Virus record (IMG/VR): IMGVR_UViG_3300032334_002567
Coordinates: 124,001-188,000 of that record
DNA: 64,000 nucleotides
Direction: 5' to 3' (one strand)
Shown piece after piece: positions 4,612 through 33,324 of this stretch. The position numbers were made by a program, and so were the translations under genes. Every line of letters begins with the position of its first letter. Position 1 is the stretch's first letter. A model generated the notes under the pieces. It was not told the DNA's origin, did no database searches, and saw nothing but the letters and a program-made list of their open reading frames with translations.

Positions 4612-4691
4612 GGGGAGTCTCCTTTTTCTGTATATATTGTGTACTAATTAATTTTTTTAGTTAAAAACGTTTTATTTTGATATATAAAATC

Positions 4692-5186
4692 ATGATATCT
4701 TTTAAAAGCTGGCTATTTGAAAACGATGCAGAGCACACAGAGACTTTAAAAAAAACGGGTTTCTGGGGCAAACAAGGAGCTGGCTGCATTATATTATCAA
4801 AAAGTACAGGTAGAATATTGTTGCCACATAGATCAAACAAAACCCTTGAGCCTAATACTTGGGGAGTTTGGGGTGGTGCTATAGACGGTGCAGAAAACCC
4901 ACAGATAGCAGCAAAAAGAGAGGTTGAAGAAGAGGCAGGATACTCTGGTCATGCCGCTATGGTGCCATTGTCTATTTTTCAGAAAAACGATTTTAAGTAT
5001 CACAACTTCTTAGCGATTGTGGATGAAGAATTCGTTCCACAACTTAACTGGGAAACACAAAACTATGTCTGGACAACTTTAGATGAACTTCCAAGTCCTC
5101 TCCATTTCGGTTTACAGTGGGTTTTATCTAGAGACAAAGGTAAAATTCAGAGTATTATAGATTCATTCAATTTAGTGCCCGCTTAA
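4692..5186 (+). CDS. Nudix hydrolase with CTS-like N-terminus
   Basis: Nudix box GGAIDGAENPQIAAKREVEEEAG; likely start MISFKSWLFE at 4692. Confidence 0.88.
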   Translation: MISFKSWLFENDAEHTETLKKTGFWGKQGAGCIILSKSTGRILLPHRSNKTLEPNTWGVWGGAIDGAENPQIAAKREVEEEAGYSGHAAMVPLSIFQKNDFKYHNFLAIVDEEFVPQLNWETQNYVWTTLDELPSPLHFGLQWVLSRDKGKIQSIIDSFNLVPA

Positions 5187-5215
5187 TATTTTATATTTGG
5201 CACTCTATTGGAGGT

Positions 5216-5440
5216 ATGCAAAAATATAATTGTACTATACCTGTAACTGGTGGTCCTATGTGTGGAGAGTCACTAGCCGTAAAAGATGGTAGAATTCCCA
5301 ATCATTTGCCTTTATTCTTTGAAGGCAAATTTTACTCATACAATCTGGTCATAGAGTCCACAGAAGATTGGACTAACATCTATTATCAATATTCTAATGA
5401 AGTTTTAGGAATTAATGTGGATAAAAGAAATCAATTATAA
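5216..5440 (+). CDS. hypothetical protein
   Basis: 74-aa ORF, GGAGG RBS. Confidence 0.55.
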   Translation: MQKYNCTIPVTGGPMCGESLAVKDGRIPNHLPLFFEGKFYSYNLVIESTEDWTNIYYQYSNEVLGINVDKRNQL

Positions 5441-5676
5441 GTTATTACTTTCATGGAATTAGACTTTACATTTGAGTAATCTGGCCCACCGAATGGGTTA
5501 GATTTTGCATTTGAGTAATCTGGCCCACCGAATGGGTTAGATTTCGCATTTGAGTAATTTGGTCCACCGAATGGATTATTGTTTACATGGTTTTTTGTTG
5601 TAATTTTTTTGCTACACATAACGTAGCTAATTAATATAACAAAAATGATAAGCATTACTATTTTTATTTTTTTCAT
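5431..5676 (-). CDS. small membrane-anchored protein with 13-aa tandem repeats
   Basis: N-terminal hydrophobic helix; three copies of NPFGGP(N/D)YSN(A/V)KS. Confidence 0.65.
   Translation of the reverse strand: MKKIKIVMLIIFVILISYVMCSKKITTKNHVNNNPFGGPNYSNAKSNPFGGPDYSNAKSNPFGGPDYSNVKSNSMKVITYN
5469..5578. repeat. 39-bp tandem repeat x3 (coding)
   Basis: CATTTGAGTAATCTGGCCCACCGAATGGGTTAGATTT units at about 5469, 5508 and 5547. Confidence 0.9.
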
Positions 5677-5708
5677 ATTTTATTTAGTTTGTAGCTTAAA
5701 TAATTATT

Positions 5709-6512
5709 ATGTTTAAATTGTGGCTTGAAAATGAAGAAAGTACTTGCACTTTAAAGATAAGCAAGCCTAATGCTAAAATACCTCATTATAACTTTAATTT
5801 GCCAGCAGGATTTACTTGTCCTTTTGCATCAAAATGTTTATCAAAAGCTGATCCAACAACTGGCAAGTTAACAGATGGACCTAATATAGATTTTAGGTGT
5901 TCTGCCGCTGGAGAAGAAGCTCGTTATCCACCTACAAGAGCACAGAGATGGAGTAACTTTGAAGCCTTGAAAGCTATAGGTTTAGACAATGTACCCAAAA
6001 TGGCAGATGCTATTGTACAGGCAATAAACCATAACTTACCAAGAAGTCATCGTACATTCAGGCTACATGCTAGTGGTGACTTCTTTAATAAGAACTATTT
6101 AAAAGCTTGGATAGAAGTTGCTCGTAGAATGCCAGATATTACTTTTTATACCTATACAAAGAGTATACCTTATATTTTAGAAAATCTACCATTACCGAAT
6201 AATTTTCTTGTGACTGTTTCCAAAGGTGGACAACAAGATGCTTTAATTGATAGGAATGGACTCAAATTTTCTGTAGTTGTTTTTAGTGAAGAAGAAGCGG
6301 CAAACTATGTTTGGCATGATAAGAGCGGCAAACAGCATGTAGGATTAGAAATTGATCATGACGATAGCCATGCTTGGAAAGATGACAAACCTTTTGCTCT
6401 ATTAATTCATGGAACACAACCAGCCGGTTCGCCCGCTTCTAAGGCTAAATCTGCACTTGCTGGAAAGGGTTCCTACGGAAAATCTAGCAATAATAGTAGT
6501 AAAACTACATAA
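5709..6512 (+). CDS. phage Gp88-like protein with CTS-like N-terminus
   Basis: LPAGFTCP..C..C, FRLHASGDF and FYTYTKS motifs typical of the Gp88 family; starts MFKLWLENEE. Confidence 0.7.
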   Translation: MFKLWLENEESTCTLKISKPNAKIPHYNFNLPAGFTCPFASKCLSKADPTTGKLTDGPNIDFRCSAAGEEARYPPTRAQRWSNFEALKAIGLDNVPKMADAIVQAINHNLPRSHRTFRLHASGDFFNKNYLKAWIEVARRMPDITFYTYTKSIPYILENLPLPNNFLVTVSKGGQQDALIDRNGLKFSVVVFSEEEAANYVWHDKSGKQHVGLEIDHDDSHAWKDDKPFALLIHGTQPAGSPASKAKSALAGKGSYGKSSNNSSKTT

Positions 6513-6996
6513 CTACTGTTTTAGGTTTGCTATTTTGAATTGCTGCCATAATATTTTGAGATTTGGTTGTCAAAATCTGGTTTGCAACTTGCTGTGAGAA
6601 GCCAGGTGAAATTGAATTCTGATTAACAGCATTCGTTGATTGTTGAGATATGTTTTCTTTTTCTTCTTCGCTCAAGTATTGCAATGTTTGATCTGAAACA
6701 TCAAAGTATGACATTACCGTTCTGTCTACTAAAGAAGGATCTCTATTTTGCGCTTTAGAAAGCATATTTTTTTTCGCCATTTCTGCCGCTTGTTTGATTG
6801 ATGATCTGCCAAACCATGCTTTTTTTGCTTGTGACGCACCCCTCAATAGTGCTGAGCCTAAAGTAAAGGCTGTGCTCATCCCAGAGGCATCAAGAGCAAG
6901 TTGACCAGCAGCACCAGCAATGGTTTTTACTGCACCCTGAGCGTCTTTTCTATATTGTAAAATATTAGACTCTATATATTCAGCAAAACTTTTCAT
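6505..6996 (-). CDS. hypothetical protein with CTS-like N-terminus
   Basis: Likely start MKSFAEYIES at 6996 (the longer ORF would overlap tmRNA); TAAATA box 5 nt upstream. Confidence 0.6.
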   Translation of the reverse strand: MKSFAEYIESNILQYRKDAQGAVKTIAGAAGQLALDASGMSTAFTLGSALLRGASQAKKAWFGRSSIKQAAEMAKKNMLSKAQNRDPSLVDRTVMSYFDVSDQTLQYLSEEEKENISQQSTNAVNQNSISPGFSQQVANQILTTKSQNIMAAIQNSKPKTVVM

Positions 6997-7054
6997 ATTC
7001 GTATTTATCCTTGGTTGGATAAAAATTGGCTGGAAAGACACCGCAAATTTAAAC

Positions 7055-7082
7055 TTTACAAGTGATTTTTTTGTGCTATACT
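7055..7082 (+). promoter_or_regulatory. sigma70-like promoter for tmRNA
   Basis: TTTACA-N16-TATACT with TGn extended -10, 12 nt before the tmRNA 5' end. Confidence 0.7.
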
Positions 7083-7094
7083 CATTTATTGTTA

Positions 7095-7444
7095 GGGGTC
7101 GCACTGGTATCGACGTAGTACAAGGAGATATTGGTGGCACGCCGAGGTTGATCGAAAGGCCTCGTAAAAATTCGATCACGTCTTAACTGACGAAGTTTCT
7201 TACGCAATGGCTGCCTGAGAAGGCAACCACAAACTTAGGAAGCCACGCAAGAAGCGTCCAAAAGTTTGTCGCAAAATCTTGCTGGTTTCAATTGGTCAAC
7301 TTAGTTGAAACGAGATTAATAGGTTGAAAAGATTCTTAGACTTTTGTTCGTTGTAGTCGAAAGAATCTTATGAACAACGAAACAAGCGTGTAGAGGCCAT
7401 ATTGAGTTTGCTTACGGACAGGGGTTCGACTCCCCTCGACTCCA
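7095..7444 (+). ncRNA. ssrA: tmRNA, tag peptide (A)DEVSYAMAA
   Basis: Acceptor stem GGGGTCG/CGACTCC with G3.U; T arm AGGGG-TTCGACT-CCCCT; pk1-like region then TAACT resume context; tag frame 7189-7218 ends MAA-TGA; 3' end reads CTA, so CCA is not encoded. Confidence 0.95.
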
Positions 7445-7446
7445 CT

Positions 7447-7482
7447 AAAAGGAGGACTACGAAAGTGGTCCTCCTTTTTTTT
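7447..7482 (+). terminator. rho-independent terminator after tmRNA
   Basis: AAAAGGAGGACTAC-GAAA-GTGGTCCTCCTTTT followed by a T run. Confidence 0.85.
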
Positions 7483-7566
7483 CCATTTACTTCTCAATAT
7501 ACCCCTTTATTTTCATATATAATATAGGTGCAATGAATGCACTGCTTTTTAAAAAGGAGTTTAATT

Positions 7567-8208
7567 ATGGCAGCTACAACAACAGAAGGAACCGGTGCCG
7601 GTTCAGCAGGTAAATATAATCCATTAATCATTAATGGAAAAGTTAAGGATGTAAACGTTTCTCGTAATGCTCTAGATATGTATAGAGGTTATTTGAGTGT
7701 CGATGGTCTTGATCTAATGAATCCTATTGCTACTATTACAGGTGATTTGGATGTTACGGGCGACATTGAAGCCACAGGTTATGTTCGTGGGCACTTAGCA
7801 GGTCAATTGTTAAATACTGCTTTCTGGACATTCGATAATGGTGTTATAGTATGCTCAAACACTTCTTTTACAGATGTTGCTAGCGTATCATACACACCAG
7901 TATCAGCAACATCAAAGTTGTTAATTGAATATCATGCTATGTATACTGTTAGTGGTAGTTTGGGAGACAGCTTTAGATCAAGACTAACACTTGATGGAAA
8001 TCAACTTACTTGGAGGGACCAAGCATTCTATAATGGTGCAGGCGGCGGAACTAGAAGCGGTGTTTTATTCCCAATTTCTATGGTTTATACAAACAGCAAT
8101 GTTGCTCTCAAGACTATAAGAGCACAGGCTGCAAGAGTTAGTGCTGATGATAGCGTATCTCTTGATACAACATCTGCTTACTTAAGAATATCTGAATATG
8201 CTCGCTAA
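7567..8208 (+). CDS. putative virion structural / fibre-like protein
   Basis: Start MAATTTEGTGAGS after AGGAG; G/T/S-rich, beta-rich C-terminal domain ending LRISEY; TATATA box upstream. Confidence 0.5.
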   Translation: MAATTTEGTGAGSAGKYNPLIINGKVKDVNVSRNALDMYRGYLSVDGLDLMNPIATITGDLDVTGDIEATGYVRGHLAGQLLNTAFWTFDNGVIVCSNTSFTDVASVSYTPVSATSKLLIEYHAMYTVSGSLGDSFRSRLTLDGNQLTWRDQAFYNGAGGGTRSGVLFPISMVYTNSNVALKTIRAQAARVSADDSVSLDTTSAYLRISEYAR

Positions 8209-8232
8209 AAAATCTTAGTTTTTAAGAATTTT

Positions 8233-8266
8233 AAACACCCGGCCCAAAAGGTCGGGTGTTTTTTTG
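8233..8266 (+). terminator. rho-independent terminator
   Basis: AAACACCCGGCC-CAAAA-GGTCGGGTGTTT followed by a T run. Confidence 0.8.
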
Positions 8267-8316
8267 TAGCTGATCTTAAAAGTGTAAAGTATTTACTATT
8301 AATATTTTGTAAATAA

Positions 8317-8388
8317 TGCGAGGTAGCATAACGGTAATGCAGCAAACTGTTAATTTGTAAAATGTCAGTTCGACTCTGACCTTCGCAG
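8317..8388 (+). tRNA. tRNA-Asn(GTT)
   Basis: Acceptor TGCGAGG/CTTCGCA; anticodon arm GCAAA-CTGTTAA-TTTGT; T arm GTCAG-TTCGACT-CTGAC; no encoded CCA. Confidence 0.92.
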
Positions 8389-8435
8389 TAATTTTTTAAA
8401 TATTGGCACGAATTAATATAATATGGAAGGACACG

Positions 8436-9011
8436 ATGCGACATAGCTCTTTGGAAAAAGCATATAAAGACATACAAACAACCAGTTTAGATTCAACGCC
8501 GATTGTCAGCAATATTTACGGCGTTGAAGTGCGAAGACCAACAGTTCATAACGATCACCGTGGTCGGTTATTTGAAGTCTTTCCTGGCACCAACACCACA
8601 GATATTTTTTGGGATAAACCTGTAGTCTATTGTTACATGTTTAGTATTCGGGCAAACCAAATTAAAGGATGGGGTTTACACGAGCATAAAGATGACCGCT
8701 ACACTTTAATCAAAGGAGAAGTACTTAATGTGCTTTTTGATGCTCGTCCTGATTCGCCCACCTACTTAAAGACACAAAATGTATACCTCAGCGAACAGGG
8801 AAACCGTTCGTTAAAAATACCAACAGGAGTTTGGCATTGTAATATAAATATTTCTGATACCGAAACCCTGTTGGTGAACCATCCTACCGAAGTTTACAAA
8901 CATGAGGCGCCAGATAGATTGCTATTACCTTGGAATTCACCTGAAATACCAGTTGATTTAAAAAAATATTTTCCTATCCAACAAATGCAGCATGAACAAT
9001 GTTCGTGTTAA
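8436..9011 (+). CDS. rmlC: dTDP-4-dehydrorhamnose 3,5-epimerase-like cupin
   Basis: DHRGRLFE, KGWGLH, DARPDSPTY and IPTGVWH motifs. Confidence 0.75.
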   Translation: MRHSSLEKAYKDIQTTSLDSTPIVSNIYGVEVRRPTVHNDHRGRLFEVFPGTNTTDIFWDKPVVYCYMFSIRANQIKGWGLHEHKDDRYTLIKGEVLNVLFDARPDSPTYLKTQNVYLSEQGNRSLKIPTGVWHCNINISDTETLLVNHPTEVYKHEAPDRLLLPWNSPEIPVDLKKYFPIQQMQHEQCSC

Positions 9012-9022
9012 AGAGAATAAGC

Positions 9023-9712
9023 ATGGTAATTGCATCTATATTAATTCCGACTCATAACCATGGTGAACTCATCAATTTCGCTGTACAGTCAGTTCTAGAA
9101 CAAACTGTACAAGACTTTGAATTGTTTATTATTGGGGACGGTCCAACAAAAGAAACACGTGTCGCTGCTCAAGCTCTGGTAAACGATAAGGTTAAATACG
9201 AAGAATTTCCTAAAGCAGGACGAACCGGCGAACCACATCGTCATCATGTAATAACAAAAAAAACGACGGGCAAATATATTTTCTATTTAAGCGATGATGA
9301 TATTTGGACCAAACGACACCTTGAAACAATGCTACAAGCTCTTCAGTCGGGAAACTTTTGTCACTCAAAATATATTGAAGTCATGGGAAAACCTCGCCAT
9401 GAACACTTGTTACCAAATGACAAGAAGCTGTTAATTAAACAAAATTTCAACTTCATTCCACTTTCTTGTGGTGCACATAGTAGAGGTTTATACGCTAAAC
9501 TTAAAGAAGGATGGACTGAGACACCAGAAAAATACCATACCGATCATTATATGTGGAAAAAACTGGTTTCTCACCCTGATTGCCTTTCGACAAGTTCAAA
9601 ACATACAACTGTTATAAATTTTCCTAGCAAAAACAGGATGAATGAGAGTATTGATTCACGCAAGCAAGAGATAGAAAAGTGGTTAGCAGAAAATACCCAA
9701 ACAATTGCGTGA
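9023..9712 (+). CDS. glycosyltransferase family 2
   Basis: SILIPTHN, SVLEQT, IGDG, YLSDDD. Confidence 0.85.
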   Translation: MVIASILIPTHNHGELINFAVQSVLEQTVQDFELFIIGDGPTKETRVAAQALVNDKVKYEEFPKAGRTGEPHRHHVITKKTTGKYIFYLSDDDIWTKRHLETMLQALQSGNFCHSKYIEVMGKPRHEHLLPNDKKLLIKQNFNFIPLSCGAHSRGLYAKLKEGWTETPEKYHTDHYMWKKLVSHPDCLSTSSKHTTVINFPSKNRMNESIDSRKQEIEKWLAENTQTIA

Positions 9713-9794
9713 AATGCTCATCAATTTGCTATTATTGGCATTGATTTTTTAATTTTATTTCATTAGAATATATCGTTCGGAGGCTGACGCAAGT

Positions 9795-9865
9795 GCGGAA
9801 ATAGTTTAATGGTAGAACTACCGTCTCCAAAGCGGTTGGTGAGGGTTCGATTCCTTCTTTCCGTG
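9795..9865 (+). tRNA. tRNA-Trp(CCA)
   Basis: Acceptor GCGGAAA/TTTCCGT; anticodon arm ACCGT-CTCCAAA-GCGGT; T arm GAGGG-TTCGATT-CCTTC. Confidence 0.92.
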
Positions 9866-9997
9866 CTTTTGGTGATTTTCCTGAGCGGTCAAAAATCACT
9901 CACTACTTTTAAAACACAGGTTAAAAGGAGAAAAAGAAAAAACAAAAAAGTTTTAATCTCTATATAATATAGGTTCTTTTACATGGAGGTTTAGATC

Positions 9998-10192
9998 ATG
10001 ATTCACAGATTTTTTTTAGTGCTTGCTAGAACAATAGATCACAGGGTGGGAAAAACAGATTCAGATAAGCCAGACATACCTGTTTTAACAATGCAAGAGG
10101 CATTGATATCTTTTTTCATTAAGTTTTTTATTGTTTTAGTTAATCTTATTACTTGTAGCTTTGTAATAGCAAATATCATACGTCACTGGTAA
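9998..10192 (+). CDS. small membrane protein
   Basis: GGAGG RBS, C-terminal hydrophobic helix, TATATA box upstream. Confidence 0.55.
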   Translation: MIHRFFLVLARTIDHRVGKTDSDKPDIPVLTMQEALISFFIKFFIVLVNLITCSFVIANIIRHW

Positions 10193-10922
10193 GATATTTA
10201 ATTAATTCTTCTCTTGATTTGATGCCTTTATATTTTAATTCTGGCTCTTTCATTTTCATCAAGGAGGAGCACAGAGATTTTTTCTTTATATCTTTTTCGT
10301 CTATAAGGTATTGTCTTAATATGAATAAGCAAAAATGTTGCTCTGGAAAAGCCACCGTTACTTGACGTTCTATTTTAACAAAGACACATGGGTTTGATGC
10401 ATCAAATTCTTTTGTTTTAAACCTAGGATGAAAATTGTATTTTTTTTCGTGTACTATGCTCCATACAAATCTTTCAAAAATTCCTTTGTATATCATTGCT
10501 TCCACAACTTTTCTACTATTGTGTAGGCTCATGGGAACAGGAGCGTGTATTTCATCAAAGTTTTTACCAACTTTTTCTGATGGTAGCCAACCACTTGGAA
10601 AGCAAACATGTGCACTCGCCATCCAATCTTTTTCGCCATCTAGCCTGTGTATAATTAGATCTTCGTCTATTTCTTTTGCTAGGCTCAGATAATCCGCAGA
10701 CTTAGTTTCTACTGGGTAGTTTAGCTTTATAAAATTAAAGCAAGTATCGTATATTTCTTTTGTGACATTAGATTCAAAAAAATATTCTTGATTGTTAAGA
10801 GCTTCTTTTTTTTCTTTATGCAGCTCAAAGCAGTCAGATTTATTTTTTTCAAATATTTCTTCTGTTTTAATTTTTTTTAGATCTGGAAGTGTGCTGAATC
10901 CATGTTCATAAGCATGATACAT
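10176..10922 (-). CDS. DUF3445 / heme-dependent oxidative N-demethylase alpha-like protein
   Basis: VCFPSGW...EKVG...IHAPVP, R.VW and KIERQ motifs. Confidence 0.7.
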   Translation of the reverse strand: MYHAYEHGFSTLPDLKKIKTEEIFEKNKSDCFELHKEKKEALNNQEYFFESNVTKEIYDTCFNFIKLNYPVETKSADYLSLAKEIDEDLIIHRLDGEKDWMASAHVCFPSGWLPSEKVGKNFDEIHAPVPMSLHNSRKVVEAMIYKGIFERFVWSIVHEKKYNFHPRFKTKEFDASNPCVFVKIERQVTVAFPEQHFCLFILRQYLIDEKDIKKKSLCSSLMKMKEPELKYKGIKSREELIKYLTSDV

Positions 10923-10923
10923 G

Positions 10924-11742: not shown

Positions 11743-11802
11743 TTGCTATATTATAGCAACTTTTGTTCTACAATAAAATAGCGAGATATACGTAAATACT
11801 AC

Positions 11803-11934
11803 ATGGAACCAGATCTATCTAAAAAAGATTATATTGCTATGATAATTTTATCAATAGTTATTAGCTCAATTGTGACGTTTATTCCATTTATTGTTCGTAT
11901 TTTGATCAATAAAATTTTTGATTTTCTTTTTTGA
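11803..11934 (+). CDS. 43-aa single-TM protein (not in the ORF track)
   Basis: MEPDLSKKDYIAMIILSIVISSIVTFIPFIVRILINKIFDFLF; TAAATA box 4 nt upstream. Confidence 0.55.
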   Translation: MEPDLSKKDYIAMIILSIVISSIVTFIPFIVRILINKIFDFLF

Positions 11935-11989
11935 TATTGCTGTTTTAACTTCTCAAGATATAATGCAAGAAAATTATATCTGGTGAAAT

Positions 11990-19229: not shown

Positions 19230-19230
19230 A

Positions 19231-19479
19231 ATGGTAAAAGTCTTCCAAAAAAACCTCTCGCCAAATGCAAGTATGGCAGAAAAAGAAATAGCCTTTAAAA
19301 AAATGTTTTCTATATTTAAAAAGGCAGTAGTAGATTCAGGAATTCTACAAGAATATAAAAAGAGGGAATTCTACGAAAGTCCGGGCGAAAAAAGAAGAAG
19401 AAAGAAAAAAGAGTCAAAAAATCAACTGCTAAAGGCTAAACTAAGAGAAAATTTTCCAGAAAGATACGGTGATGCATGA
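19231..19479 (+). CDS. rpsU: ribosomal protein bS21
   Basis: FKKAVVDSGILQEYKKREFYESPGEKRRRKK. Confidence 0.88.
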   Translation: MVKVFQKNLSPNASMAEKEIAFKKMFSIFKKAVVDSGILQEYKKREFYESPGEKRRRKKKESKNQLLKAKLRENFPERYGDA

Positions 19480-22912: not shown

Positions 22913-22949
22913 CTGCCTATTTTTATTCACTTTACGCATAAATACAATC

Positions 22950-23657
22950 ATGGGATGCAACAACACAAATATCAATAATAGCGGGTATATTCCAAATTCA
23001 GGCTACAATTGCGTTGATGAATATGGTTGCTCGGCTGCTTGTCCAGATTTTTCAATACGCAGGAATGACACCAAGCCAGATTTCAGGCTCCAAATGCAAG
23101 ATTGTGATGGTCCTATGGACTTAACAGATCTTGTTCTGGAAAGCAGTATGTGGGCAAGGGGTAAATTAAAGTCTACGATTGAGGACGACTCTACTCAAAT
23201 ATCTTTTGCAGACAATGTTGGATTTTACCAAGTTGCTATTAATGACGTAATTATAATGGACAGACCAAGAAGCCCAGAGAAAATGTTGGTAACTGGAATA
23301 GATGAAGTTTCTAAAATTATAACGGTAGAAAGAGCCCACGACAGCACTGATGCTCAACCTTGGAAAAAAGGTTCTCCTTTAAGAATAATTAAATTTTTGA
23401 ATGCTGATGCACAAACTGAAATGCTTTATGAGGATGTAACGGAGCTTGACGGCACAGTAAACCAGAATGTTTTAATTGAAAGTTACTTTGTTTATAACTG
23501 GGACATTGCTGACACCTTACTTCCGGGTTGCTATTACTTTGAATTTAAGTTAATAAAGTTAAATGAATCTTCTGAAGTCGAATGGATGAGAAGATTTCCA
23601 ACAGACCGAGAAGGTTTTTTAATAAAGATAAATGACACAATTCCTAGCGAAGCTTAG
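22950..23657 (+). CDS. putative virion structural protein (BppU-like Ig domain)
   Basis: Likely start MGCNN after a TAAATA box; FSIRRNDTKP ... YNW..DT..PG.Y..EF pattern of baseplate-upper-type domains. Confidence 0.5.
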   Translation: MGCNNTNINNSGYIPNSGYNCVDEYGCSAACPDFSIRRNDTKPDFRLQMQDCDGPMDLTDLVLESSMWARGKLKSTIEDDSTQISFADNVGFYQVAINDVIIMDRPRSPEKMLVTGIDEVSKIITVERAHDSTDAQPWKKGSPLRIIKFLNADAQTEMLYEDVTELDGTVNQNVLIESYFVYNWDIADTLLPGCYYFEFKLIKLNESSEVEWMRRFPTDREGFLIKINDTIPSEA

Positions 23658-23670
23658 GTTGGAGACATAG

Positions 23671-25278: not shown

Positions 25279-25284
25279 AAAATA

Positions 25285-25815
25285 ATGTCGATAGATCCAG
25301 AAGATTTTAGAATTAATTGGAAGATTAAATCTTTTCAAGTTCGTGTTGTCATGGATGACAAACAACTTGGTGTAATGAATACAGATAAGGCAAGAAGGAT
25401 TGCCGAAGAAGCTGGGCTCGACTTGGTTGAAGTCGCCCCAGCAGCAAAGCCACCTGTTTGTAAAATAATTGATTATGGACGCTTTAAATACGAACAACAA
25501 CTTAAGAAAAAAGAGCAGGCTAAAAAACAAAAAGAATCTAAGGTTCAAATAAAGGAATTAAGATTAAGGCCTACTATAGCTGACAACGATATAGCCGTTA
25601 AAATTTCACAAGCCAAGGATTTTTTGGAAGACAGGATGAAAGTTCAGTTTAATCTGATGTTTAAGGGTCAAAGAGAACTGATACATAAAGAAAAAGGTTT
25701 TACAGTTATAAATCATATTATTTCAAGTTTATCTGAGGTTTCTCTTTTAGATAGGCCTCCAAAGCTTGATGGAAATAAAATAATTTGTTGTTTAAGTCCT
25801 AAAGTATCATCATGA
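25285..25815 (+). CDS. infC: translation initiation factor IF-3
   Basis: RIN..I...VRV, LDLVEVAPAAKPPVCKIIDYGRFKYE, KELRLRP. Confidence 0.95.
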   Translation: MSIDPEDFRINWKIKSFQVRVVMDDKQLGVMNTDKARRIAEEAGLDLVEVAPAAKPPVCKIIDYGRFKYEQQLKKKEQAKKQKESKVQIKELRLRPTIADNDIAVKISQAKDFLEDRMKVQFNLMFKGQRELIHKEKGFTVINHIISSLSEVSLLDRPPKLDGNKIICCLSPKVSS

Positions 25816-26822: not shown

Positions 26823-26850
26823 TTGCATAAAATATTTAAATGGAGGCTTT

Positions 26851-28335
26851 GTGGAAAAGTATATTGGCAAAAACTTTGTAGATGGTAGTTGGATAGCACA
26901 AAGAGAAGACTTTTTGAGTTACAATCCATCCACAGAAGAAATTATTGGCGGATTTCCTCAGACTAATTCTGAAGAGATAACTCATTCCTTGAAAGTAGCC
27001 AGAAAAGGTTTTGATGTTTGGCGAAAGATTTCAAAAGTAAAAAGAGCAGATTACTTTTGGTCCCTTTGCAAAATTCTAGAGCAGAGAGTTGGCGACGTAG
27101 CTAAAGCAATTTCTTTGGAAACTGGTAAAAACCTTAATGAAAGTAAGGCCGAAGTTATTGAGGCTTTACATATGGCTCAGTATTGTTTTGGAAAAGGGAG
27201 AGAAACTTCTGGAGATATTGTTCCCTCTGAAATTGCAGAAAAAGATTGTTATATTGTTCGAAAACCTAAGGGTGTAGTTGCAATAATAGCACCATGGAAT
27301 TTTCCCTTTGCTATTGGTGGTTTTTGGTGTGCTGGCCCTTCTCTTATTGAAGGAAATACCGTTGTTTTTAAGCCTAGTGAATTAACACCCATGGTCGGAC
27401 AGATAACCGCAGAACTTTTTGATCAAGCGGGATTTCCCAAAGGCGTATTTAACTTAATTCATGGAGATGGTGAGGTTGGGGCCAAAATAGTCAATAGCGA
27501 TTTAGTGGATCATATATGCTTTACAGGCAGTGCAGAAGTAGGCAGGTCAATAAGAGTTGCTTGTGCAAATAGTTGGCACAAAACATGTAGTTGTGAAATG
27601 GGCAGTAAGTCTGCTGTGGTTGTTTTAAACGACGCAGATATTGACTTAGCTGTTTCCGCTTGCATAAATAGTGCTTTTAAACTAAGCGGACAGAGATGTG
27701 TTTCGGCTGGAAGACTATTGATACAAAGAGATATTCTTCCTGAATTTAAGCAAAGATTTTTAAGTGAATTACATTTATCTGGCTATGGCGATCCTTTTAA
27801 TATGGATAAGTCTAAAAATTATTCTGTTTATTTTGGTCCTCTAATTAGTAAAGATCAAAAAGAAAGGGTATCTTGTTTTAATCAAAAGGCGAGAGAAGAT
27901 AAAGATGTGACCATACTTTACGACATAATCAGCCCAGAGCCTAAGGGAAATTACTTAGCACCTTTTGTTTACCAGTGTGAGTGGGGCGATAAAGAATTTC
28001 TAAAAAATGAGGTATTTGGGCCACATCTAGCAATTATACCTTTTGATACGGTAGAACAAGCAATTGAGATTTATAATGATACCGAGTATGGTTTATCTTT
28101 GGGGTTGATAACTAATGACTTTAAAAAAGCACGACAGTTTAGAGACAACTGTGACTTTGGTTTGGGCTATTGGAACGGAGGCAGTATTGCGGCAGAGTCA
28201 CACCTTCCTTTTGGCGGCGTCAAAAAATCTGGCAATGGCAGCCCTTCTGCTGCTGGTTTATTTGATGGTGTTGTTCACAAGGTTACATGGACTGTTAACC
28301 ATGGAGCCTTATCATTTCCACAGGGCTTAAAATAA
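26851..28335 (+). CDS. NAD(P)-dependent aldehyde dehydrogenase
   Basis: PWNFP, KPSE, FTGS, EMGSK, GQRC, EVFGP, PFGG; GTG start after GGAGG (TTG at 26815 is an alternative). Confidence 0.92.
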   Translation: MEKYIGKNFVDGSWIAQREDFLSYNPSTEEIIGGFPQTNSEEITHSLKVARKGFDVWRKISKVKRADYFWSLCKILEQRVGDVAKAISLETGKNLNESKAEVIEALHMAQYCFGKGRETSGDIVPSEIAEKDCYIVRKPKGVVAIIAPWNFPFAIGGFWCAGPSLIEGNTVVFKPSELTPMVGQITAELFDQAGFPKGVFNLIHGDGEVGAKIVNSDLVDHICFTGSAEVGRSIRVACANSWHKTCSCEMGSKSAVVVLNDADIDLAVSACINSAFKLSGQRCVSAGRLLIQRDILPEFKQRFLSELHLSGYGDPFNMDKSKNYSVYFGPLISKDQKERVSCFNQKAREDKDVTILYDIISPEPKGNYLAPFVYQCEWGDKEFLKNEVFGPHLAIIPFDTVEQAIEIYNDTEYGLSLGLITNDFKKARQFRDNCDFGLGYWNGGSIAAESHLPFGGVKKSGNGSPSAAGLFDGVVHKVTWTVNHGALSFPQGLK

Positions 28336-28344
28336 GGAGTTAAT

Positions 28345-28755: not shown

Positions 28756-28763
28756 GGAAAAAA

Positions 28764-29159
28764 ATGAATAAGATATTAAACTCAGATGGTTCACCAATGC
28801 TTACCCCTATTCCAAAGATTTCAGCTGTAAAGCCAGCGGGTTCACAGGTTCTAGTGGAGATTTTAACTGCACAAGAATTGATGGGAACAACTTTAACATT
28901 AGCAGAGAACACAGACCTAAAGGTACCTTTGCAGGGTTATATTAGAGGCGTTGGCCCATCCTTTAATCAAGATGCTTGGGGTTTTAACTTAGGTGATAGA
29001 GTGCTCATCTCTGGTGGTGGTGTTCTAGCTCCAAACTATGACGATACTCATAGAGATCGATTTTTTATGGAGCCACACGCTATAAAGAGTGTATTAATCG
29101 AAGAAAGTGACCCAGTCGAGGAAGTTGATCAATCAGGCAGCTATAATGAATCCCTATAA
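28764..29159 (+). CDS. GroES-like co-chaperonin
   Basis: VKPAGSQVLVE...G.IRGVG...LGDRVL. Confidence 0.65.
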   Translation: MNKILNSDGSPMLTPIPKISAVKPAGSQVLVEILTAQELMGTTLTLAENTDLKVPLQGYIRGVGPSFNQDAWGFNLGDRVLISGGGVLAPNYDDTHRDRFFMEPHAIKSVLIEESDPVEEVDQSGSYNESL

Positions 29160-30165
29160 TGCATTAGGAGTAGAATCTAATTCTACCCTTGATGATATAA
29201 AAAAAGCTTATAGAGACTTAGTTAAGAAGTATCATCCTGATTTAAATCCTGATGATATTGAGTCGGCTAAGAGATTTAAAGAGATTCAACATGCCTATGA
29301 AATCTTGACAGGTCAATCTAGGAGAACAAACACAGAAAGGTCAAGTCCTAAGCATAATCCTTTTGATTTTGACTTTTCTGCTGATTTGTTTGGCTCTAGT
29401 ACATTCAAGGGCAAAAACGTTATTGTAAGGTTAGAGATTGATTTATTAGAATCTATCAGTGGTTGTAAGAAATTTGTAAAAGCAAAAAAAAGAAAAAGGT
29501 GCGACGATTGCGATGGACAAGGTTGCACAGATTTTTTGATTTGCGAGCAATGCTCTGGTAATGGTTTTATACAAGCTCCTAGTGTTCCGTTCACTATAAA
29601 ACAGTCTTGTCCAAATTGTGCTGGCTTAGGCAAGATAAAATTAAAAAAATGTGACAAGTGTGCAGCAACAGGTTTTTCTTCTTATGAAGAAAAGGATATA
29701 GAAGTAGAAATACCATCAGGCATACAAAACAATGCTCAGCTTAGTTTTGCTGGTGATGGAGAAGAGTCTGTTAGGGGTGGCAGGCAAGGCGATTTAATAA
29801 TTATAGTTAAGGTTAAAGATGATCCTTTATTTAAAAGAGAAGGATCTAATTTACATATAGAGGTTCCAGTTTCATATACCCAGCTTGCACTTGGTTGTGA
29901 ACTGCTTGTACCCTCTATATTTAAAGAAAGATTAATTGTTAAAATTCCTCAAGGATGTCAGCCGCAAACAAAATTTAAGGTTAAGGGAAAAGGTGTATTA
30001 ACTAAAGCTCATATAGGTGATATGATAGTGTCTTTAAAGCTCGAAATACCAAGACAGACCGACGATGAGTATAAGTCTACTTTAAAGGAACTTTCTGCTT
30101 TTGAACAAAAAAATGTTACACCACAAAGGCAAAATTGGCTTAATAATTTGGAAACTCAACAGTAA
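29146..30165 (+). CDS. dnaJ: chaperone DnaJ
   Basis: J domain with HPD; four CxxCxGxG-type repeats; C-terminal GDL/LALG domain. Confidence 0.92.
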   Translation: MNPYNALGVESNSTLDDIKKAYRDLVKKYHPDLNPDDIESAKRFKEIQHAYEILTGQSRRTNTERSSPKHNPFDFDFSADLFGSSTFKGKNVIVRLEIDLLESISGCKKFVKAKKRKRCDDCDGQGCTDFLICEQCSGNGFIQAPSVPFTIKQSCPNCAGLGKIKLKKCDKCAATGFSSYEEKDIEVEIPSGIQNNAQLSFAGDGEESVRGGRQGDLIIIVKVKDDPLFKREGSNLHIEVPVSYTQLALGCELLVPSIFKERLIVKIPQGCQPQTKFKVKGKGVLTKAHIGDMIVSLKLEIPRQTDDEYKSTLKELSAFEQKNVTPQRQNWLNNLETQQ

Positions 30166-30186
30166 ATAAAATTAATAGGAGGGAAC

Positions 30187-30724: not shown

Positions 30725-30779
30725 GTTATTACTACTTTAACTTCGTAAGAATATTTATTATCAAGGGTCTTATATTTAA

Positions 30780-31106: not shown

Positions 31107-31114
31107 GAGGAAAA

Positions 31115-31471: not shown

Positions 31472-31677
31472 AGATTTTTGCTATTATTTCTGTAGCAAGG
31501 CAGGTAGACGGTGAATATTGCGTAGTTAAGGTAGAAAAAGGCTTTAAAACAGGAACCTTGGCAGAACAATATGCAAAAAGTTTAGTTTCCAAATATGCAG
31601 AAAATATTCAAACTCCAACCGGATTAATTGAGTGCGTTTGTGAAAGAGGAATATTTGAGATTGATATTGACGAGTGA
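31468..31677 (+). CDS. hypothetical protein
   Basis: AGGAGG RBS; ATGA overlap. Confidence 0.55.
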   Translation: MKIFAIISVARQVDGEYCVVKVEKGFKTGTLAEQYAKSLVSKYAENIQTPTGLIECVCERGIFEIDIDE

Positions 31678-31720
31678 CTTTAATAAGTTTATATTTTAAC
31701 GAACCAAAAGGAGAATCATC

Positions 31721-32452
31721 ATGGCCGAAATGCCCCACAACCCTTTAGAAGGCGAAAGACCAGAGCTAAGCGTAAAGTTGCATGACACAACTGATGAACA
31801 TTTGTCAATTGTTGTAGTGCATAAAGACAGACCAGAATATCTGAATATTTGTCTTCAGTCTATTGCTGTGACATCTTTTAACAACAACTATGAAATTATA
31901 GTCGTAGATAATAACAGCGGCAAAGAATCACAAGACTTCTTGAGCGAGATAGAAGGTGAAGTAAAAGTTGTAAGAAGCGATAAAAATTTGTACTGGGCCG
32001 CTGCTTGCAACAAAGGAGCAGCAGCAGCAGATAAAAATTCAAAATACATAGTTTTTTTGCATTGCGATGTTGTTGTTCTGAATCCAGCTTGGATAGATTT
32101 ATTGATAAATGTTTCCGAGGGTCAACAATCTGGCATGGTGGGTGTAGAAAGTCAATCTTATATGGTTGGCACACAAAGAATGGAATTTTTACAAGACTAC
32201 ACTTTGCTCTTTACTAGAGAAGCTTGGAGCAACATCGGACCATGGCCAGAAGAATTACCTCAAATTGGTGGCTCTTTCATATTAACAGTAAGGGCACAGT
32301 CTGCAGGCTATAAGCCTCAGATTATGAAGAATCCAATAGTTCACCACTACAAGGTGTTCAGTTTGGAGACAAGTGAATTTGAAAGAATGACTGAACAAGC
32401 TATGGTAACAATTCCAAAGTTAATGACAGACTTACAGTCTAGGCCTGTTTAA
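31721..32452 (+). CDS. glycosyltransferase family 2
   Basis: LSIVVV, YEIIVVDNNS, N.GA, FLHCD. Confidence 0.8.
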   Translation: MAEMPHNPLEGERPELSVKLHDTTDEHLSIVVVHKDRPEYLNICLQSIAVTSFNNNYEIIVVDNNSGKESQDFLSEIEGEVKVVRSDKNLYWAAACNKGAAAADKNSKYIVFLHCDVVVLNPAWIDLLINVSEGQQSGMVGVESQSYMVGTQRMEFLQDYTLLFTREAWSNIGPWPEELPQIGGSFILTVRAQSAGYKPQIMKNPIVHHYKVFSLETSEFERMTEQAMVTIPKLMTDLQSRPV

Positions 32453-32466
32453 TTGGAGAAAAAACA

Positions 32467-32832
32467 ATGCCATATATTAGCAAAGAAAACAGGCAAGAGC
32501 TGGATGAGGCAATAGAGTCTCTTCGTTGGGCAATTGTTAGACTGATTGCCCCAAAAGATCGTGACTATAAGATTTTTGACATATCTTCTCATAATCTTCT
32601 AGACTCTGCTGGTAATTTAAACTATGTGATAACAAGACTCTGCGCAGGTCTAATTTGTGAACCTAGTTATTCTAAGATAGCAATTATAACTGGTGTGCTT
32701 GAAAACGTTAAACAAGAGCTTTATAGGCGTGGTGCTTCTGAGTACGAGGATCTCAAGTCTAAGGAAAATGGCGACATACCAGAGTACGTTTATATGTCCA
32801 AACTTATAAAAAATTCCTCTAATTCAATTTAA
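32467..32832 (+). CDS. conserved phage protein (DUF6899-like)
   Basis: MPYI..R, G.LNY, G.LE..K.E.YRR...YED.K...NGD. Confidence 0.6.
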   Translation: MPYISKENRQELDEAIESLRWAIVRLIAPKDRDYKIFDISSHNLLDSAGNLNYVITRLCAGLICEPSYSKIAIITGVLENVKQELYRRGASEYEDLKSKENGDIPEYVYMSKLIKNSSNSI

Positions 32833-33267
32833 TTTCTTTATAAAGTTCATCCATGCTTCATGATCGTGGATTCTAGGACAATGGTCTCCAGAGTAGTAGC
32901 AAGCATACGCCATGCAAAAAAGTTCTTCAGGTGGTTGATCTTGTTTTTTTTCTTCTGTGGAATCTAGCACTTTTTTCCATGATTTTCTCATGTTTTCATC
33001 GATAAGATGCTCCCACACTAAGTGTGCTATTTCATGTAATGTTGTGAATTTTCTAGAATAGTTCCAAGGTGCGGCTACTACTATTTTGTCTTTATGTATA
33101 TAACCGATATGTTGTTCATCACCTTTTAAAGTATTGTTTGGCGTATAAGTAAACTTGTACTTATGCAACATCCTTTTGTGATTTTTTGGAAGATTTGCTA
33201 TAAGAACTTTTACGTTCCTCTCTTCCTCAGATTCGGTCTCTTCTAAAAATTTTTTAAAACTTTCCAT
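32824..33267 (-). CDS. HEXXH zincin-like metallopeptidase with CTS-like N-terminus
   Basis: LHEIAH and PEELFC; starts MESFKKFLEE; exact TATAAATA 4 nt upstream. Confidence 0.65.
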   Translation of the reverse strand: MESFKKFLEETESEEERNVKVLIANLPKNHKRMLHKYKFTYTPNNTLKGDEQHIGYIHKDKIVVAAPWNYSRKFTTLHEIAHLVWEHLIDENMRKSWKKVLDSTEEKKQDQPPEELFCMAYACYYSGDHCPRIHDHEAWMNFIKKLN

Positions 33268-33324
33268 TCTTTATTTATATTTGCTACAATGAAAATTTAA
33301 AATAATTTAGCTATTATAATTTGT

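What the first reader, a model, noticed from the sequence alone, without database searches (positions are those of the whole stretch)
4681..33279. Apparently leaderless late mRNAs alongside phage-encoded initiation factors
Seen: in at least seven genes the box is only 4-6 nt from the ATG, with no Shine-Dalgarno: 4692 (5 nt), 5676- (4), 5709 (6), 6996- (5), 11803 (4), 22950 (5) and 33267- (4). Transcription would start essentially at the AUG. Known: IF-3 levels modulate leaderless initiation, and bS21 affects SD-dependent initiation. Inference: the phage IF-3 and bS21 may retune host ribosomes towards these leaderless late transcripts.
Basis: partly seen in the sequence, partly recalled or inferred. 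Interest (0 to 1): 0.62.

Follow-up and report, generated by a model that had tools for sequence, protein, structure and literature searches.

The report
Promoter-like box abutting start codons
In this huge freshwater phage a short TATA-like box sits 4-7 bases before the start codon of about two dozen genes that lack a ribosome-binding site; this is conserved in related phages and probably gives mRNAs with almost no leader, but nothing ties it to the phage's own IF-3 and bS21 genes.

Summary
All seven box-to-ATG distances are as stated, and none has a well-placed Shine-Dalgarno. IF-3 and bS21 are present in the window.

The box is TAWATA (TAAATA or TATATA). Genome-wide, 23 boxes lie 4-7 nt before the first ATG of an ORF, against 4.9 expected (p=3e-9). 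Control hexamers give 0-6.

The box is conserved in orthologues from four other phage genomes while its flanks diverge. Orthologues switch between "box+4/5, no SD" and "box+13-30 with an SD between". That is how a promoter behaves, not a ribosome-binding site.

Box-adjacent genes are strongly enriched (odds ratio 22) for a shared N-terminal peptide, M-x-F-K-x-W-L-x-E. It resembles the T4 capsid-targeting sequence and confirms these ATGs as true starts.

Leaderless or near-leaderless mRNAs are therefore the best reading, at about 0.5. No RNA data exist, and the commonest spacing (4 nt) is shorter than known promoter geometries allow. About a quarter of the phage's genes lack an SD anyway.

"Late" is only inferred. 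The IF-3/bS21 link is unsupported: in E. coli, excess IF-3 inhibits leaderless translation and losing bS21 helps it.

The parts
4681..4686 (+). TATATA box (TATATAAA), 5 nt before ATG 4692
4692..5186 (+). NUDIX hydrolase gene. The N-terminus MISFKSWLFEN carries the tag. No SD.
5681..5686 (-). TAAATA box, 4 nt before ATG 5676
5431..5676 (-). 81-aa protein with a signal-peptide-like start and three NPFGGP-YSN-KS repeats. No SD and no tag.
5697..5702 (+). TAAATA box, 6 nt before ATG 5709. It shares a 32-nt divergent intergenic region with the 5676 box.
5709..6512 (+). GP88-family protein (PF17338). The N-terminus MFKLWLENEE carries the tag.
7002..7007 (-). TAAATA box, 5 nt before ATG 6996
6505..6996 (-). 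163-aa protein of unknown function with the tag-like start MKSFAEYIES. The true start is ATG 6996, not GTG 7179.
11793..11798 (+). TAAATA box, 4 nt before ATG 11803
11803..11934 (+). 43-aa hydrophobic ORF. Its status as a gene is unverified.
22939..22944 (+). TAAATA box (gcATAAATA), 5 nt before ATG 22950. A TAWATA box at +4/+5 is kept in orthologues of four other genomes.
22950..23657 (+). 235-aa conserved viral protein of unknown function with a Cys-rich N-terminus
33272..33279 (-). TATAAATA box; its TAAATA core ends 4 nt before ATG 33267. The G003 orthologue has ATAAATA+4.
32824..33267 (-). 147-aa protein whose N-terminus MESFKKFLEE carries the tag
4631..4636 (-). Distal-class box: TATATA 19 nt before ATG 4611, with AAGGAG between. 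The tagged protein starts MKFKTFQEYID. The arrangement is kept in G001, G002 and G003.
33675..33680 (+). Distal-class box: TAAATA 30 nt before ATG 33711, with AAAGGA between, placed 10 nt after a terminator hairpin. The G003 orthologue has the box at +5 and no SD.
30752..30757 (-). Distal-class box, 27 nt before ATG 30724 (tagged protein)
52477..52484 (-). Distal-class box TATATATA, 20 nt before ATG 52456 (tagged protein)
53476..53483 (+). Distal-class box TATATAAT; its TATATA core ends 21 nt before ATG 53503, with GGGAGG between (tagged protein)
55425..55430 (-). Distal-class box, 27 nt before ATG 55397 (tagged protein)
19231..19479 (+). Phage bS21 gene. It starts 2 nt after the stop of the upstream gene. 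It has a weak SD and no box.
25285..25815 (+). Phage IF-3 gene (IF3_N plus IF3_C). It has an ATG start, is internal to an operon and has no box.
38412..38702 (+). 96-aa sigma-70 region-2-only protein. It is a candidate reader of a box-only promoter and is kept as a separate ORF in G003.

Best explanation
TAWATA (TAAATA or TATATA, often aTAWATAa) is the core of a phage-specific promoter of the -10 type. It has no -35 partner and resembles the T4 late box. It is probably read by host RNA polymerase carrying one of the three phage sigma-like proteins. The 96-aa region-2-only protein is the obvious candidate.

The box drives a regulon enriched for proteins that begin with M-x-F-K-x-W-L-x-E. This tag resembles the T4 capsid-targeting sequence, so these proteins are probably loaded into proheads and made late.

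The promoter occurs in two arrangements. In the distal one it lies 13-35 nt before the ATG with an ordinary Shine-Dalgarno in the leader. In the proximal one it lies 3-8 nt (mode 4) before an SD-less ATG, so the mRNA would start at or within about 3 nt of the AUG and would be translated as a leaderless or near-leaderless message.

Shown: the motif, its spacing, the absence of SD, its conservation, the toggling between arrangements, and the tag association. Inferred: promoter function, the TSS position, which sigma reads the box, late timing and capsid targeting.

The phage IF-3 and bS21 are ordinary-looking factors. No link between them and this gene class is demonstrated.
For: (1) Spacing. 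TAWATA to the first ATG peaks at 4-7 nt (23 cases against 4.9 expected, p=3e-9), has a trough at 8-17 nt and a plateau from 18 nt. The same shape is seen in relatives G001, G002 and G003.

(2) SD. 24 of 27 proximal-box genes have no SD, while 37 of 61 distal-box genes have one.

(3) Conservation of the box while flanks diverge. The 22950 orthologues keep TAWATA+4/5+ATG in five genomes at 48-58% protein identity. The same holds for 33267, -67421 and -14012 (window-relative coordinates).

(4) Orthologues toggle. Gene -25926 has box+4 in G000 and G003, but box+15 with TGGAG in G001 and box+13 with AAGGTG in G002. Gene 33711 has box+30 with AAAGGA in G000 and box+5 in G003. The box is kept even when a true SD exists, so it is not merely a substitute for a ribosome-binding site.

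(5) In those SD-bearing orthologues the SD begins 5-7 nt after the box, where a transcript would start.

(6) TAAATA and TATATA interchange at orthologous positions (4611 in G002; 22950 in LR756511).

(7) The tag is tied to the proximal box: odds ratio 22, p=3e-12 in G000 and odds ratio 14, p=4e-6 in relatives. The tag is an N-terminal feature, matching 10.2% of N-termini against 0.96% of internal Met positions. This fixes the ATG as the start.

(8) Context. Five of the seven window sites open divergent gene pairs, one with only 32 nt between the two ATGs. Boxes lie just after terminator hairpins at 33711, 205611 and -87019.

(9) Transcription machinery. Three sigma-like ORFs are present, including a conserved region-2-only one. 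No phage RNA polymerase was found.

(10) Precedent. A Pribnow-type box localised about 10 nt from the start codon is the validated computational signature of leaderless transcription (PMC6028130).
Against: No RNA run holds this phage, so no 5' end is known.

The commonest spacing is 4 nt. With T4 geometry (box at -13..-6, PMC1524935) +1 would fall on the U of AUG; with sigma-70 geometry it would fall on the G. The model needs a start 1-2 nt closer to the box than in any characterised system.

Six bases occurring 864 times in the genome cannot specify a promoter alone, and the extra determinants are not identified. Only a weak A/T patch 15-20 nt upstream was seen.

Lack of an SD is not diagnostic here. 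132 of 404 genes with no box also lack an SD, including 32 of 165 tightly coupled internal genes, often with A-rich sequence before the ATG.

Terminators directly upstream of boxes are not enriched.

No gp55 or gp21 homologue was found, and structural genes could not be identified to test 'late'.
Confidence: 0.5

Rival explanations
1. The box acts in the RNA, not the DNA. It would be an A/U-rich element of a normal 5' leader that replaces or assists the SD. It could be an S1-type or Kozak-like A-rich ribosome-binding context, or the operator or processing site of a phage RNA-binding protein or nuclease. The mRNAs would then be leadered and start further upstream.
For: SD-independent initiation on leadered or internal genes is frequent in this phage: 132 of 404 box-less genes, often with AAATAAAA just before the ATG. 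The 4-nt modal spacing fits no known promoter geometry but is unproblematic for an RNA element. Two cases (6996; the G003 33267 orthologue) have AGGA(G) immediately 5' of the box, which would lie in the transcript only if it starts upstream. The depletion of boxes 8-17 nt from the ATG is also expected if the SD simply occupies that space.
Against: The box is retained 13-30 nt upstream when a genuine SD is present, in both orthologues and paralogues. An SD substitute would be dispensable there. TATATA and TAAATA are classic -10/TATA-type sequences. In the 32-nt divergent region at 5677-5708, both leaders would have to start inside the opposite gene. At 33711, 205611 and -87019 a terminator hairpin lies just upstream of the box.
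Confidence: 0.3
2. The pattern is largely common descent and composition. A 5' cassette (box + ATG + tag codons) would have spread among accessory genes by duplication and recombination, as in the polymorphic internal-protein loci of T-even phages. The box-ATG adjacency and its link to the tag would then reflect shared ancestry in AT-rich intergenic DNA rather than a special mode of expression.
For: Five of the seven window sites lie in a 7.4-kb island (4612-11990) that is absent from all relatives. The tag and box co-occur far more than independent features would. Other TA-rich hexamers are also mildly enriched before starts.
Against: Box-adjacent genes without the tag exist, such as 22950, 5676 and 98911. 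The 22950 box is kept at +4/+5 in five genomes while everything around it, including the N-terminal residues, has diverged. Synonymous sites in the tag codons vary. Composition-matched control hexamers do not show the effect.
Confidence: 0.12
3. One reading: the phage IF-3 and bS21 reprogramme host ribosomes to favour these leaderless messages.
For: The only support is co-occurrence in one genome and its relatives of the box class with IF-3, bS21, tmRNA, peptide deformylase and tRNAs. The phage IF-3 clade carries a one-residue insertion (GQRE) next to the conserved R131/R133 region, of unknown effect.
Against: In E. coli, raised IF-3 inhibits leaderless and SD-less initiation (PMC9031893; PMC2268962). 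Ribosomes lacking uS2/bS21 translate lambda cI leaderless mRNA better (PMC10491246). The phage IF-3 keeps both domains and Y75, R99 and R133. About 65% of phage genes use an SD. Neither factor gene carries the box.
Confidence: 0.08

Closest known systems
T4-type late promoters (TATAAATA read by gp55/gp33/gp45), and the ATAAATA boxes predicted before structural genes of the jumbo phages CBB and GAP32
   Same: A short A/T box of nearly the same sequence with no -35 element. The full TATAAATA occurs at 33272-33279. It is found before a phage-specific gene set. A minimal sigma-like protein is encoded (96 aa, region 2 only). Variants such as CTAAATA (Aeh1) and ATAAATA (CBB) are known (PMC1524935, PMC5259590).
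   Different: No gp55, gp33 or gp21 homologue was detected. TATATA is an equal alternative to TAAATA. In T4 the box lies upstream of normal SD-bearing leaders. Here about 27 genes have it 3-8 nt from an SD-less ATG, closer than the T4 -13..-6 geometry allows for the modal case.
Leaderless genes of Actinobacteria and Deinococcus (GeneMarkS-2 'group C'), and lambda cI from P_RM
   Same: A -10-type box localised about 10 nt before the start codon, no SD, an AUG start, and coexistence with SD-led genes in the same genome (PMC6028130, PMC4007540).
   Different: Here it is a phage-specific gene class in a genome that is about 65% SD-led. The box lacks the conserved final T of sigma-70 -10 elements. 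The spacer is 4-7 nt rather than about 6-7. No TSS data exist. The one jumbo phage with dRNA-seq (phiKZ, early phase) showed no leaderless transcripts (PMC8244752).
T4 capsid-targeting sequence (CTS) of the internal proteins IPI-III, MKTYQEFIAE, cleaved by gp21 after L/I-x-E
   Same: An N-terminal peptide of about 10 residues on otherwise unrelated proteins. Two aromatic residues lie three apart, followed by L/I and then Glu 1-4 residues later. One family here reads MKFKTFQEYID and another MNFEQWFIAE (PMC9026906).
   Different: About 50 carriers (10% of genes) against a handful in T4. No prohead protease was identified. Packaging and cleavage are untested.
Phage-encoded bS21 and initiation factors in large freshwater and huge phages
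   Same: bS21 and IF-3 genes belonging to large, purely metagenomic (phage-like) clades. Published bS21 phages are also freshwater (PMC9723584, PMC6375957).
   Different: Here bS21 sits beside DnaE, a DHH phosphoesterase and peptide deformylase, not in the structural module. The host is probably not Bacteroidota: the phage uses SD strongly, and its tmRNA has a standard TTTACA-16-TGcTATACT promoter.

Membership tests
Bacterial leaderless transcription unit | -10-type promoter box localised about 7-12 nt upstream of the start codon | tested here: met
   TAWATA ends 4-7 nt before 23 ORF-opening ATGs against 4.9 expected. The same peak is seen in three relatives. The modal spacer of 4 nt is shorter than canonical.
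Bacterial leaderless transcription unit | No Shine-Dalgarno before the start codon | tested here: met
   24 of 27 proximal-box genes score above -3 kcal/mol. The seven window sites were checked individually.
Bacterial leaderless transcription unit | Transcription start mapped at, or within a few nt of, the AUG | not testable with these tools
   No RNA run holds the sequence.
Bacterial leaderless transcription unit | The gene is first in its transcription unit | tested here: inconclusive
   Five of seven window sites open divergent pairs. Some genome-wide cases follow a co-directional gene closely. Terminators upstream are not enriched.
T4-type late promoter system | TATAAATA-like box without a -35 element | tested here: met
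   The consensus is aTAWATAa. No -35-like conservation was seen, only a weak A/T patch. The full TATAAATA occurs at 33272-33279.
T4-type late promoter system | gp55-family late sigma (with gp33 and the clamp) | tested here: not met
   phrog_234 gives no hit. A 96-aa sigma region-2-only ORF exists instead. The genome is only 79% complete.
T4-type late promoter system | The box precedes late (structural) genes | tested here: inconclusive
   Ten large ORFs gave only two weak 'tail protein' hits, and neither capsid nor portal was identified. The window sites precede NUDIX, GP88 and unknown proteins.
T4 capsid-targeting sequence | N-terminal decapeptide with aromatic residues three apart, then L/I-x-E | tested here: met
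   50 N-termini match. The consensus is M-(x)-N/S-F-K-E-W-L-E/x-x-E, enriched 10.6-fold over internal Met positions.
T4 capsid-targeting sequence | Cognate prohead protease (gp21/S77 type) and cleavage or packaging | tested here: not met
   PF03420 and PF04586 give no hit. The control genomes also did not ring for PF03420, so that search has low power. Cleavage is not testable here.
Translation initiation factor IF-3 | IF3_N and IF3_C domains with conserved residues | tested here: met
   E-values are 1e-28 and 3e-24. Y75, R99 and R133 are invariant in the alignment with E. coli infC.
Ribosomal protein bS21 | Ribosomal_S21 domain | tested here: met
   PF01165 at 45.7 bits, above the cut-off of 27.

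The most novel reading that the evidence does not exclude
A clade of huge freshwater phages runs two translation regimes side by side. Most genes use strong SDs. A regulon of roughly 25-30 genes per genome is transcribed from a minimal TAWATA promoter placed directly on the start codon and translated as leaderless mRNA. This regulon is enriched for proteins with a capsid-targeting-like N-terminal tag, which would be virion-loaded and injected. The phage's own translation kit (IF-3, bS21, tmRNA, deformylase) would shift the balance between the two regimes during infection.
Probability: 0.1. Interest if true: 0.8.

Novelty: new variant of a known kind. Interest (0 to 1): 0.55.

Why it matters
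Leaderless mRNAs in phages are known mainly as single cases (lambda cI) or in phages of hosts that are themselves rich in leaderless genes.

If the reading is right, this would be a conserved, phage-specific class of leaderless messages in a genome that otherwise relies on SDs, driven by a T4-late-like box. It would give a clean natural system for asking how ribosomes partition between leaderless and SD-led messages during infection.

The associated N-terminal tag on about 10% of the proteins is the more concrete by-product. If it is a capsid-targeting signal, it would name the injected proteome of an uncultured huge phage from sequence alone. That proteome would include a NUDIX hydrolase and a GP88-family protein.

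The work also corrects the direction of the proposed IF-3/bS21 link.

Tried and rejected
RNA evidence: the single run search found seven DNA runs (freshwater or lake metagenomes) and no RNA run.

Close relatives of the GP88 gene in IMG/VR: none.

Host identification:
- IF-3 against genome contigs found nothing.
- The nearest cellular IF-3 hits are at most 51% identical and taxonomically mixed (Planctomycetota, Alphaproteobacteria, Spirochaetales).
- bS21 relatives are all unnamed metagenomic sequences.
- The host remains unknown.

Searches of the phage's own genome with no hit: T4 gp55 (phrog_234), gp21 (PF03420), HK97-type protease (PF04586), multisubunit RNAP beta (PF00562) and T7-type RNAP (PF00940).

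Structural genes: a PHROG scan of ten large ORFs gave only two weak tail hits, so 'late' could not be tested through structural genes.

Terminators directly upstream of boxes: 2 of 27 proximal and 3 of 61 distal, against 13 of 404 other genes. This is not enriched.

The sigma-70 consensus scan of 4400-12100 found 29 sites against 26.7 in shuffles, which is uninformative.

TATAAATA as a strict 8-mer is too rare to explain the pattern. The register that gives consistent spacing is the hexamer TAWATA.

The idea that the 96-aa sigma is the first half of a split sigma was rejected. The next ORF has a signal peptide, and both are separate in G003.

A structured RNA in 33326-33478 has a fold z-score of -1.6, which is not significant.

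The Atlas search for the 22950 protein returned only viral hypothetical proteins.

Full report
CONTEXT

The window is bases 124001-188000 of a single 381,443-bp IMG/VR virus record. The record is linear, estimated 79% complete, and has 36.5% G+C. Its DNA occurs in freshwater and lake metagenomes, and no RNA run holds it. Its DnaE-type polymerase is 47% identical to that of a 595-kb uncultured phage, LR756511.1. It is 59-78% identical to those of five IMG/VR contigs. I fetched three of these whole: G001 (98 kb), G002 (70 kb) and G003 (126 kb).

THE OBSERVATION

Every coordinate and spacing in the finding is correct if the "box" is read as the hexamer TAWATA.
- TAAATA lies before 5676(-), 5709(+), 6996(-), 11803(+), 22950(+) and 33267(-).
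- TATATA lies before 4692(+).
- The box ends 4, 6, 5, 4, 5, 4 and 5 nt from the respective ATG.

None of the seven has a usable Shine-Dalgarno. Only 6996 has an AAGGA, about 13 nt away.

bS21 (19231-19479) and IF-3 (25285-25815, both domains) are present.

There are two caveats.
- 11803 opens only a 43-aa hydrophobic ORF.
- The reading frame of 6996 stays open up to a GTG at 7179. That stretch has negative coding potential and overlaps a tmRNA gene on the other strand. ATG 6996 is therefore the start.

IS IT MORE THAN CHANCE?

Yes, though the class is small. The genome has 864 TAWATA boxes. Of these, 82 are followed by an ATG at 4-7 nt (56 expected), and 23 of those ATGs are the first ATG of an ORF of at least 60 aa (4.9 expected, Poisson p=3e-9). 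Ten control A/T hexamers give 0-6. In the window alone the count is 5 against 1.1.

The spacing histogram has a peak at 4 nt (11 cases), a shoulder at 5-7 nt, a trough at 8-17 nt and a plateau from 18 nt. The same shape appears in G001, G002 and G003.

The phage is otherwise a strong SD user. AAGGAG is 11-fold enriched upstream of starts, and about 65% of genes have an SD.

WHAT THE BOX-ADJACENT GENES SHARE

The proteins that start at these ATGs share an N-terminal peptide:
- MISFKSWLFEN (4692)
- MFKLWLENEE (5709)
- MKSFAEYIES (6996)
- MESFKKFLEE (33267)

Many more occur elsewhere in the genome, for example MNFKEWL.., MNFKDWILLE, MNFEQWFIAE and MKFKTFQEYID.

A regular expression for the tag matches 50 of 492 N-termini but only 0.96% of internal Met positions. 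The consensus is M-(x)-N/S-F-K-E-W-L-E/x-x-E.

The tag is tightly linked to a proximal box. The odds ratio is 22 (p=3e-12) in this genome and 14 (p=4e-6) in the three relatives.

The pattern mirrors the T4 capsid-targeting sequence. That sequence is the first ten residues of IPIII, in which residues 4 and 7 target and residues 8 and 10 direct cleavage by gp21 after L/I-x-E (PMC9026906). The motif MKTYQEFIAE is attested.

This has two consequences. First, the ATGs next to the box are true start codons. Second, if the analogy holds, these are proteins loaded into proheads and hence made late. That is the only support for "late", and it is indirect. The window genes themselves encode a NUDIX hydrolase, a GP88-family protein and unknowns. 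No prohead protease was found.

PROMOTER OR RNA SIGNAL?

Tagged genes fall into two classes.
- In one class the box is 2-8 nt from an SD-less ATG.
- In the other the same box (TATATA, TATATAAA, TATATAAT or TAAATA) lies 19-35 nt upstream with a good SD in between. Window examples are 4611(-), 33711(+), 52456(-), 53503(+) and 55397(-).

Comparative data are the strongest evidence that the box acts as a promoter.

The box is conserved while its flanks diverge.
- The 22950 orthologues keep the box at +4/+5: gcATAAATA in G000, G001 and G003, tcATAAATA in G002 and TATATA in LR756511.1.
- These five genomes share 48-58% protein identity, and even the N-terminal residues differ.
- The genes at 33267, -67421 and -14012 (window-relative coordinates) behave the same way.

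Orthologues also toggle between the two classes.
- Gene -25926 has box+4 in G000 and G003. It has box+15 with TGGAG in G001 and box+13 with AAGGTG in G002.
- Gene 33711 has box+30 with AAAGGA in G000 and box+5 with no SD in G003.

A sequence that merely replaced the SD would be dispensable once an SD is present. A promoter would not. In those SD-bearing orthologues the SD begins 5-7 nt after the box, just where a transcript would begin.

TAAATA and TATATA also replace each other at orthologous sites.

Five of the seven window sites open divergent gene pairs, one with only 32 nt between the two ATGs. At 33711, 205611 and -87019 the box follows a terminator hairpin.

The phage encodes three sigma-like proteins and no RNA polymerase of its own. 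One of them (38412-38702) is a 96-aa region-2-only protein. It is kept as a separate ORF in G003. This is the kind of minimal sigma that would read a -10-only promoter, functionally like T4 gp55. It does not match the gp55 family.

WHAT ARGUES AGAINST A LEADERLESS READING

The modal spacing is the main problem. The T4 late box occupies -13 to -6 (PMC1524935), so leader length equals spacing minus 5. Spacing 5 gives a perfect leaderless mRNA, and spacings 6-7 give leaders of 1-2 nt. The commonest spacing, 4 (5676, 11803 and 33267), would put +1 on the U of AUG. Sigma-70 geometry is worse. The model therefore needs a start site 1-2 nt closer to the box than in any characterised system.

A hexamer present 864 times cannot define a promoter on its own. 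I found only an A before the box and a weak A/T patch 15-20 nt upstream.

"No SD" proves little in this phage. 132 of 404 genes without a box also lack an SD. These include 32 of 165 tightly coupled internal genes, often with A-rich sequence before the ATG. SD-independent initiation on leadered RNA must therefore be common.

Terminators upstream of boxes are not enriched.

I put the promoter reading at about 0.7 and leaderless or near-leaderless mRNAs at about 0.5. An RNA-level A/U-rich signal is at about 0.3.

IF-3 AND bS21

Both genes are internal members of long co-directional gene strings in a block that also holds DnaE, a DHH phosphoesterase, a CopG-like protein, peptide deformylase, a TPP enzyme, an aldehyde dehydrogenase and DnaJ. 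They have weak SDs and no box.

The phage IF-3 belongs to a large metagenomic clade. It retains Y75, R99, R133 and the other invariant residues of E. coli IF-3. Its only clade-specific feature is a one-residue insertion (GQRE) of unknown effect.

- Raised IF-3 inhibits leaderless and SD-less initiation in E. coli (PMC9031893; PMC2268962).
- Ribosomes lacking uS2 and bS21 handle the lambda cI leaderless mRNA better (PMC10491246).

The published model for phage bS21 is preferential translation of phage mRNAs late in infection of Bacteroidetes hosts (PMC9723584). Here the host is unidentified. It is unlikely to be a Bacteroidete, because the phage uses SDs heavily and its tmRNA has a standard TTTACA-16-TGcTATACT promoter.

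The link between the factors and the box class therefore rests on co-occurrence only.

COMPARISON WITH WHAT IS KNOWN

- ATAAATA- and TATAAATA-type late boxes are known in T4-like phages and have been predicted in the jumbo phages CBB and GAP32 (PMC5259590).
- A -10 box localised next to the start codon is the accepted computational signature of leaderless genes (PMC6028130).
- The one jumbo phage examined by dRNA-seq, phiKZ in its early phase, showed no leaderless transcripts (PMC8244752).

What is new here is the combination: a conserved phage-specific class with the box directly on SD-less start codons, evolutionary toggling with leadered versions, and the tie to a capsid-targeting-like tag carried by about 10% of the proteins. 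A literature search for the tag found nothing. I rate this as a new variant of a known kind.

VERDICT

The leaderless reading is plausible and is the best available, but it is unproven and has a real geometric difficulty. "Late" is inferred only by analogy. The IF-3/bS21 connection is unsupported and runs against precedent.

Noticed in passing
Outside the window: window-relative 148,000-198,600 (genome about 272-322.6 kb), + strand: About 75 copies of a very strongly conserved, orientation-specific intergenic motif, aaATAATTGTACCCTAnnnnnTGT. It lies 15-65 nt before ATGs with clear SDs (GGAG or ccccAACGGAG), one per small gene. TTGTACCC occurs 30 times in sense and 2 in antisense in upstream regions. 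It looks like a second, much better defined phage-specific promoter class giving normal leaders.
   Followed up: partly
Genome-wide. Window examples: 4692, 5709, 6996, 33267, 4611, 30724, 33711, 52456, 53503, 54423, 55397: About 50 proteins (10% of genes) start with M-(x)-N/S-F-K-E-W-L-x-x-E. This resembles the T4 capsid-targeting sequence and its L/I-x-E cleavage site. The same tag occurs in G001-G003 and in the 595-kb phage LR756511.1 (MLNFKEWLIDE). A literature search found nothing.
   Followed up: partly
window 7095-7447 (+): Phage-encoded tmRNA (Rfam RF00023, 133.7 bits). It has a sigma-70-type promoter, TTTACA-16-TGcTATACT, at 7055-7082 and a terminator at 7447-7478. ARAGORN did not call it.
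   Followed up: partly
window 8317-8388 and 9795-9866 (+): tRNA-Asn(GTT) and tRNA-Trp(CCA) genes.
   Followed up: no
window 46794-46909 (+): SAM-I/IV riboswitch aptamer (RF01725, 52.2 bits against a gathering score of 41.1) inside a phage genome. The downstream gene was not examined.
   Followed up: no
window 4612-11990: A 7.4-kb variable island between two conserved genes (the 4611 gene and DnaE) that is absent from all relatives. It holds the NUDIX gene, the repeat protein, GP88, the 6996 gene, the tmRNA, two tRNAs, a 2OG-Fe(II) oxygenase and the 43-aa ORF. Five of the seven reported sites lie in it.
   Followed up: partly
window 19805-20293, 29107-30165, 23671-25278, 26815-28335: Peptide deformylase next to bS21, a full DnaJ (J domain, zinc finger and C-terminal domain), and a TPP-dependent enzyme and an aldehyde dehydrogenase flanking IF-3. 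Together these form a translation/proteostasis/metabolism block.
   Followed up: no
window 11742 (-) and 37118 (+): Two more SD-less ATGs, each with a perfect TATAAT lying 7 and 5 nt upstream (gcTATAATatagcaaATG; tcTATAATagaatATG). This is a sigma-70-type -10 in the position expected for leaderless starts. The first gene encodes a 2OG-Fe(II) oxygenase.
   Followed up: no
window 38412-38702 (+), plus genome 197511-198389 (+) and 330421-331332 (-): Three sigma-70-like ORFs. One has 96 aa with region 2 only. Two have about 300 aa with regions 2 and 4. No phage RNA polymerase was detected.
   Followed up: partly
window 33268-33710: A 443-nt intergenic region that is only 52 nt in G003. It contains a TATAAT at 33314-33319, several hairpins and a terminator at about 33633-33660. 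It has no Rfam hit, and the fold z-score is only -1.6.
   Followed up: partly
window 25285-25815 (alignment A1): The phage-clade IF-3 proteins all carry a one-residue insertion (F-K/R-G-Q-R-E) that cellular IF-3 lacks. It lies beside the conserved R131/R133 region of the C-terminal domain.
   Followed up: no
window 5431-5676 (-): A small secreted or membrane protein with three tandem copies of NPFGGP(D/N)YSN(A/V)KS. The matching DNA repeats are at about 5470-5590.
   Followed up: no
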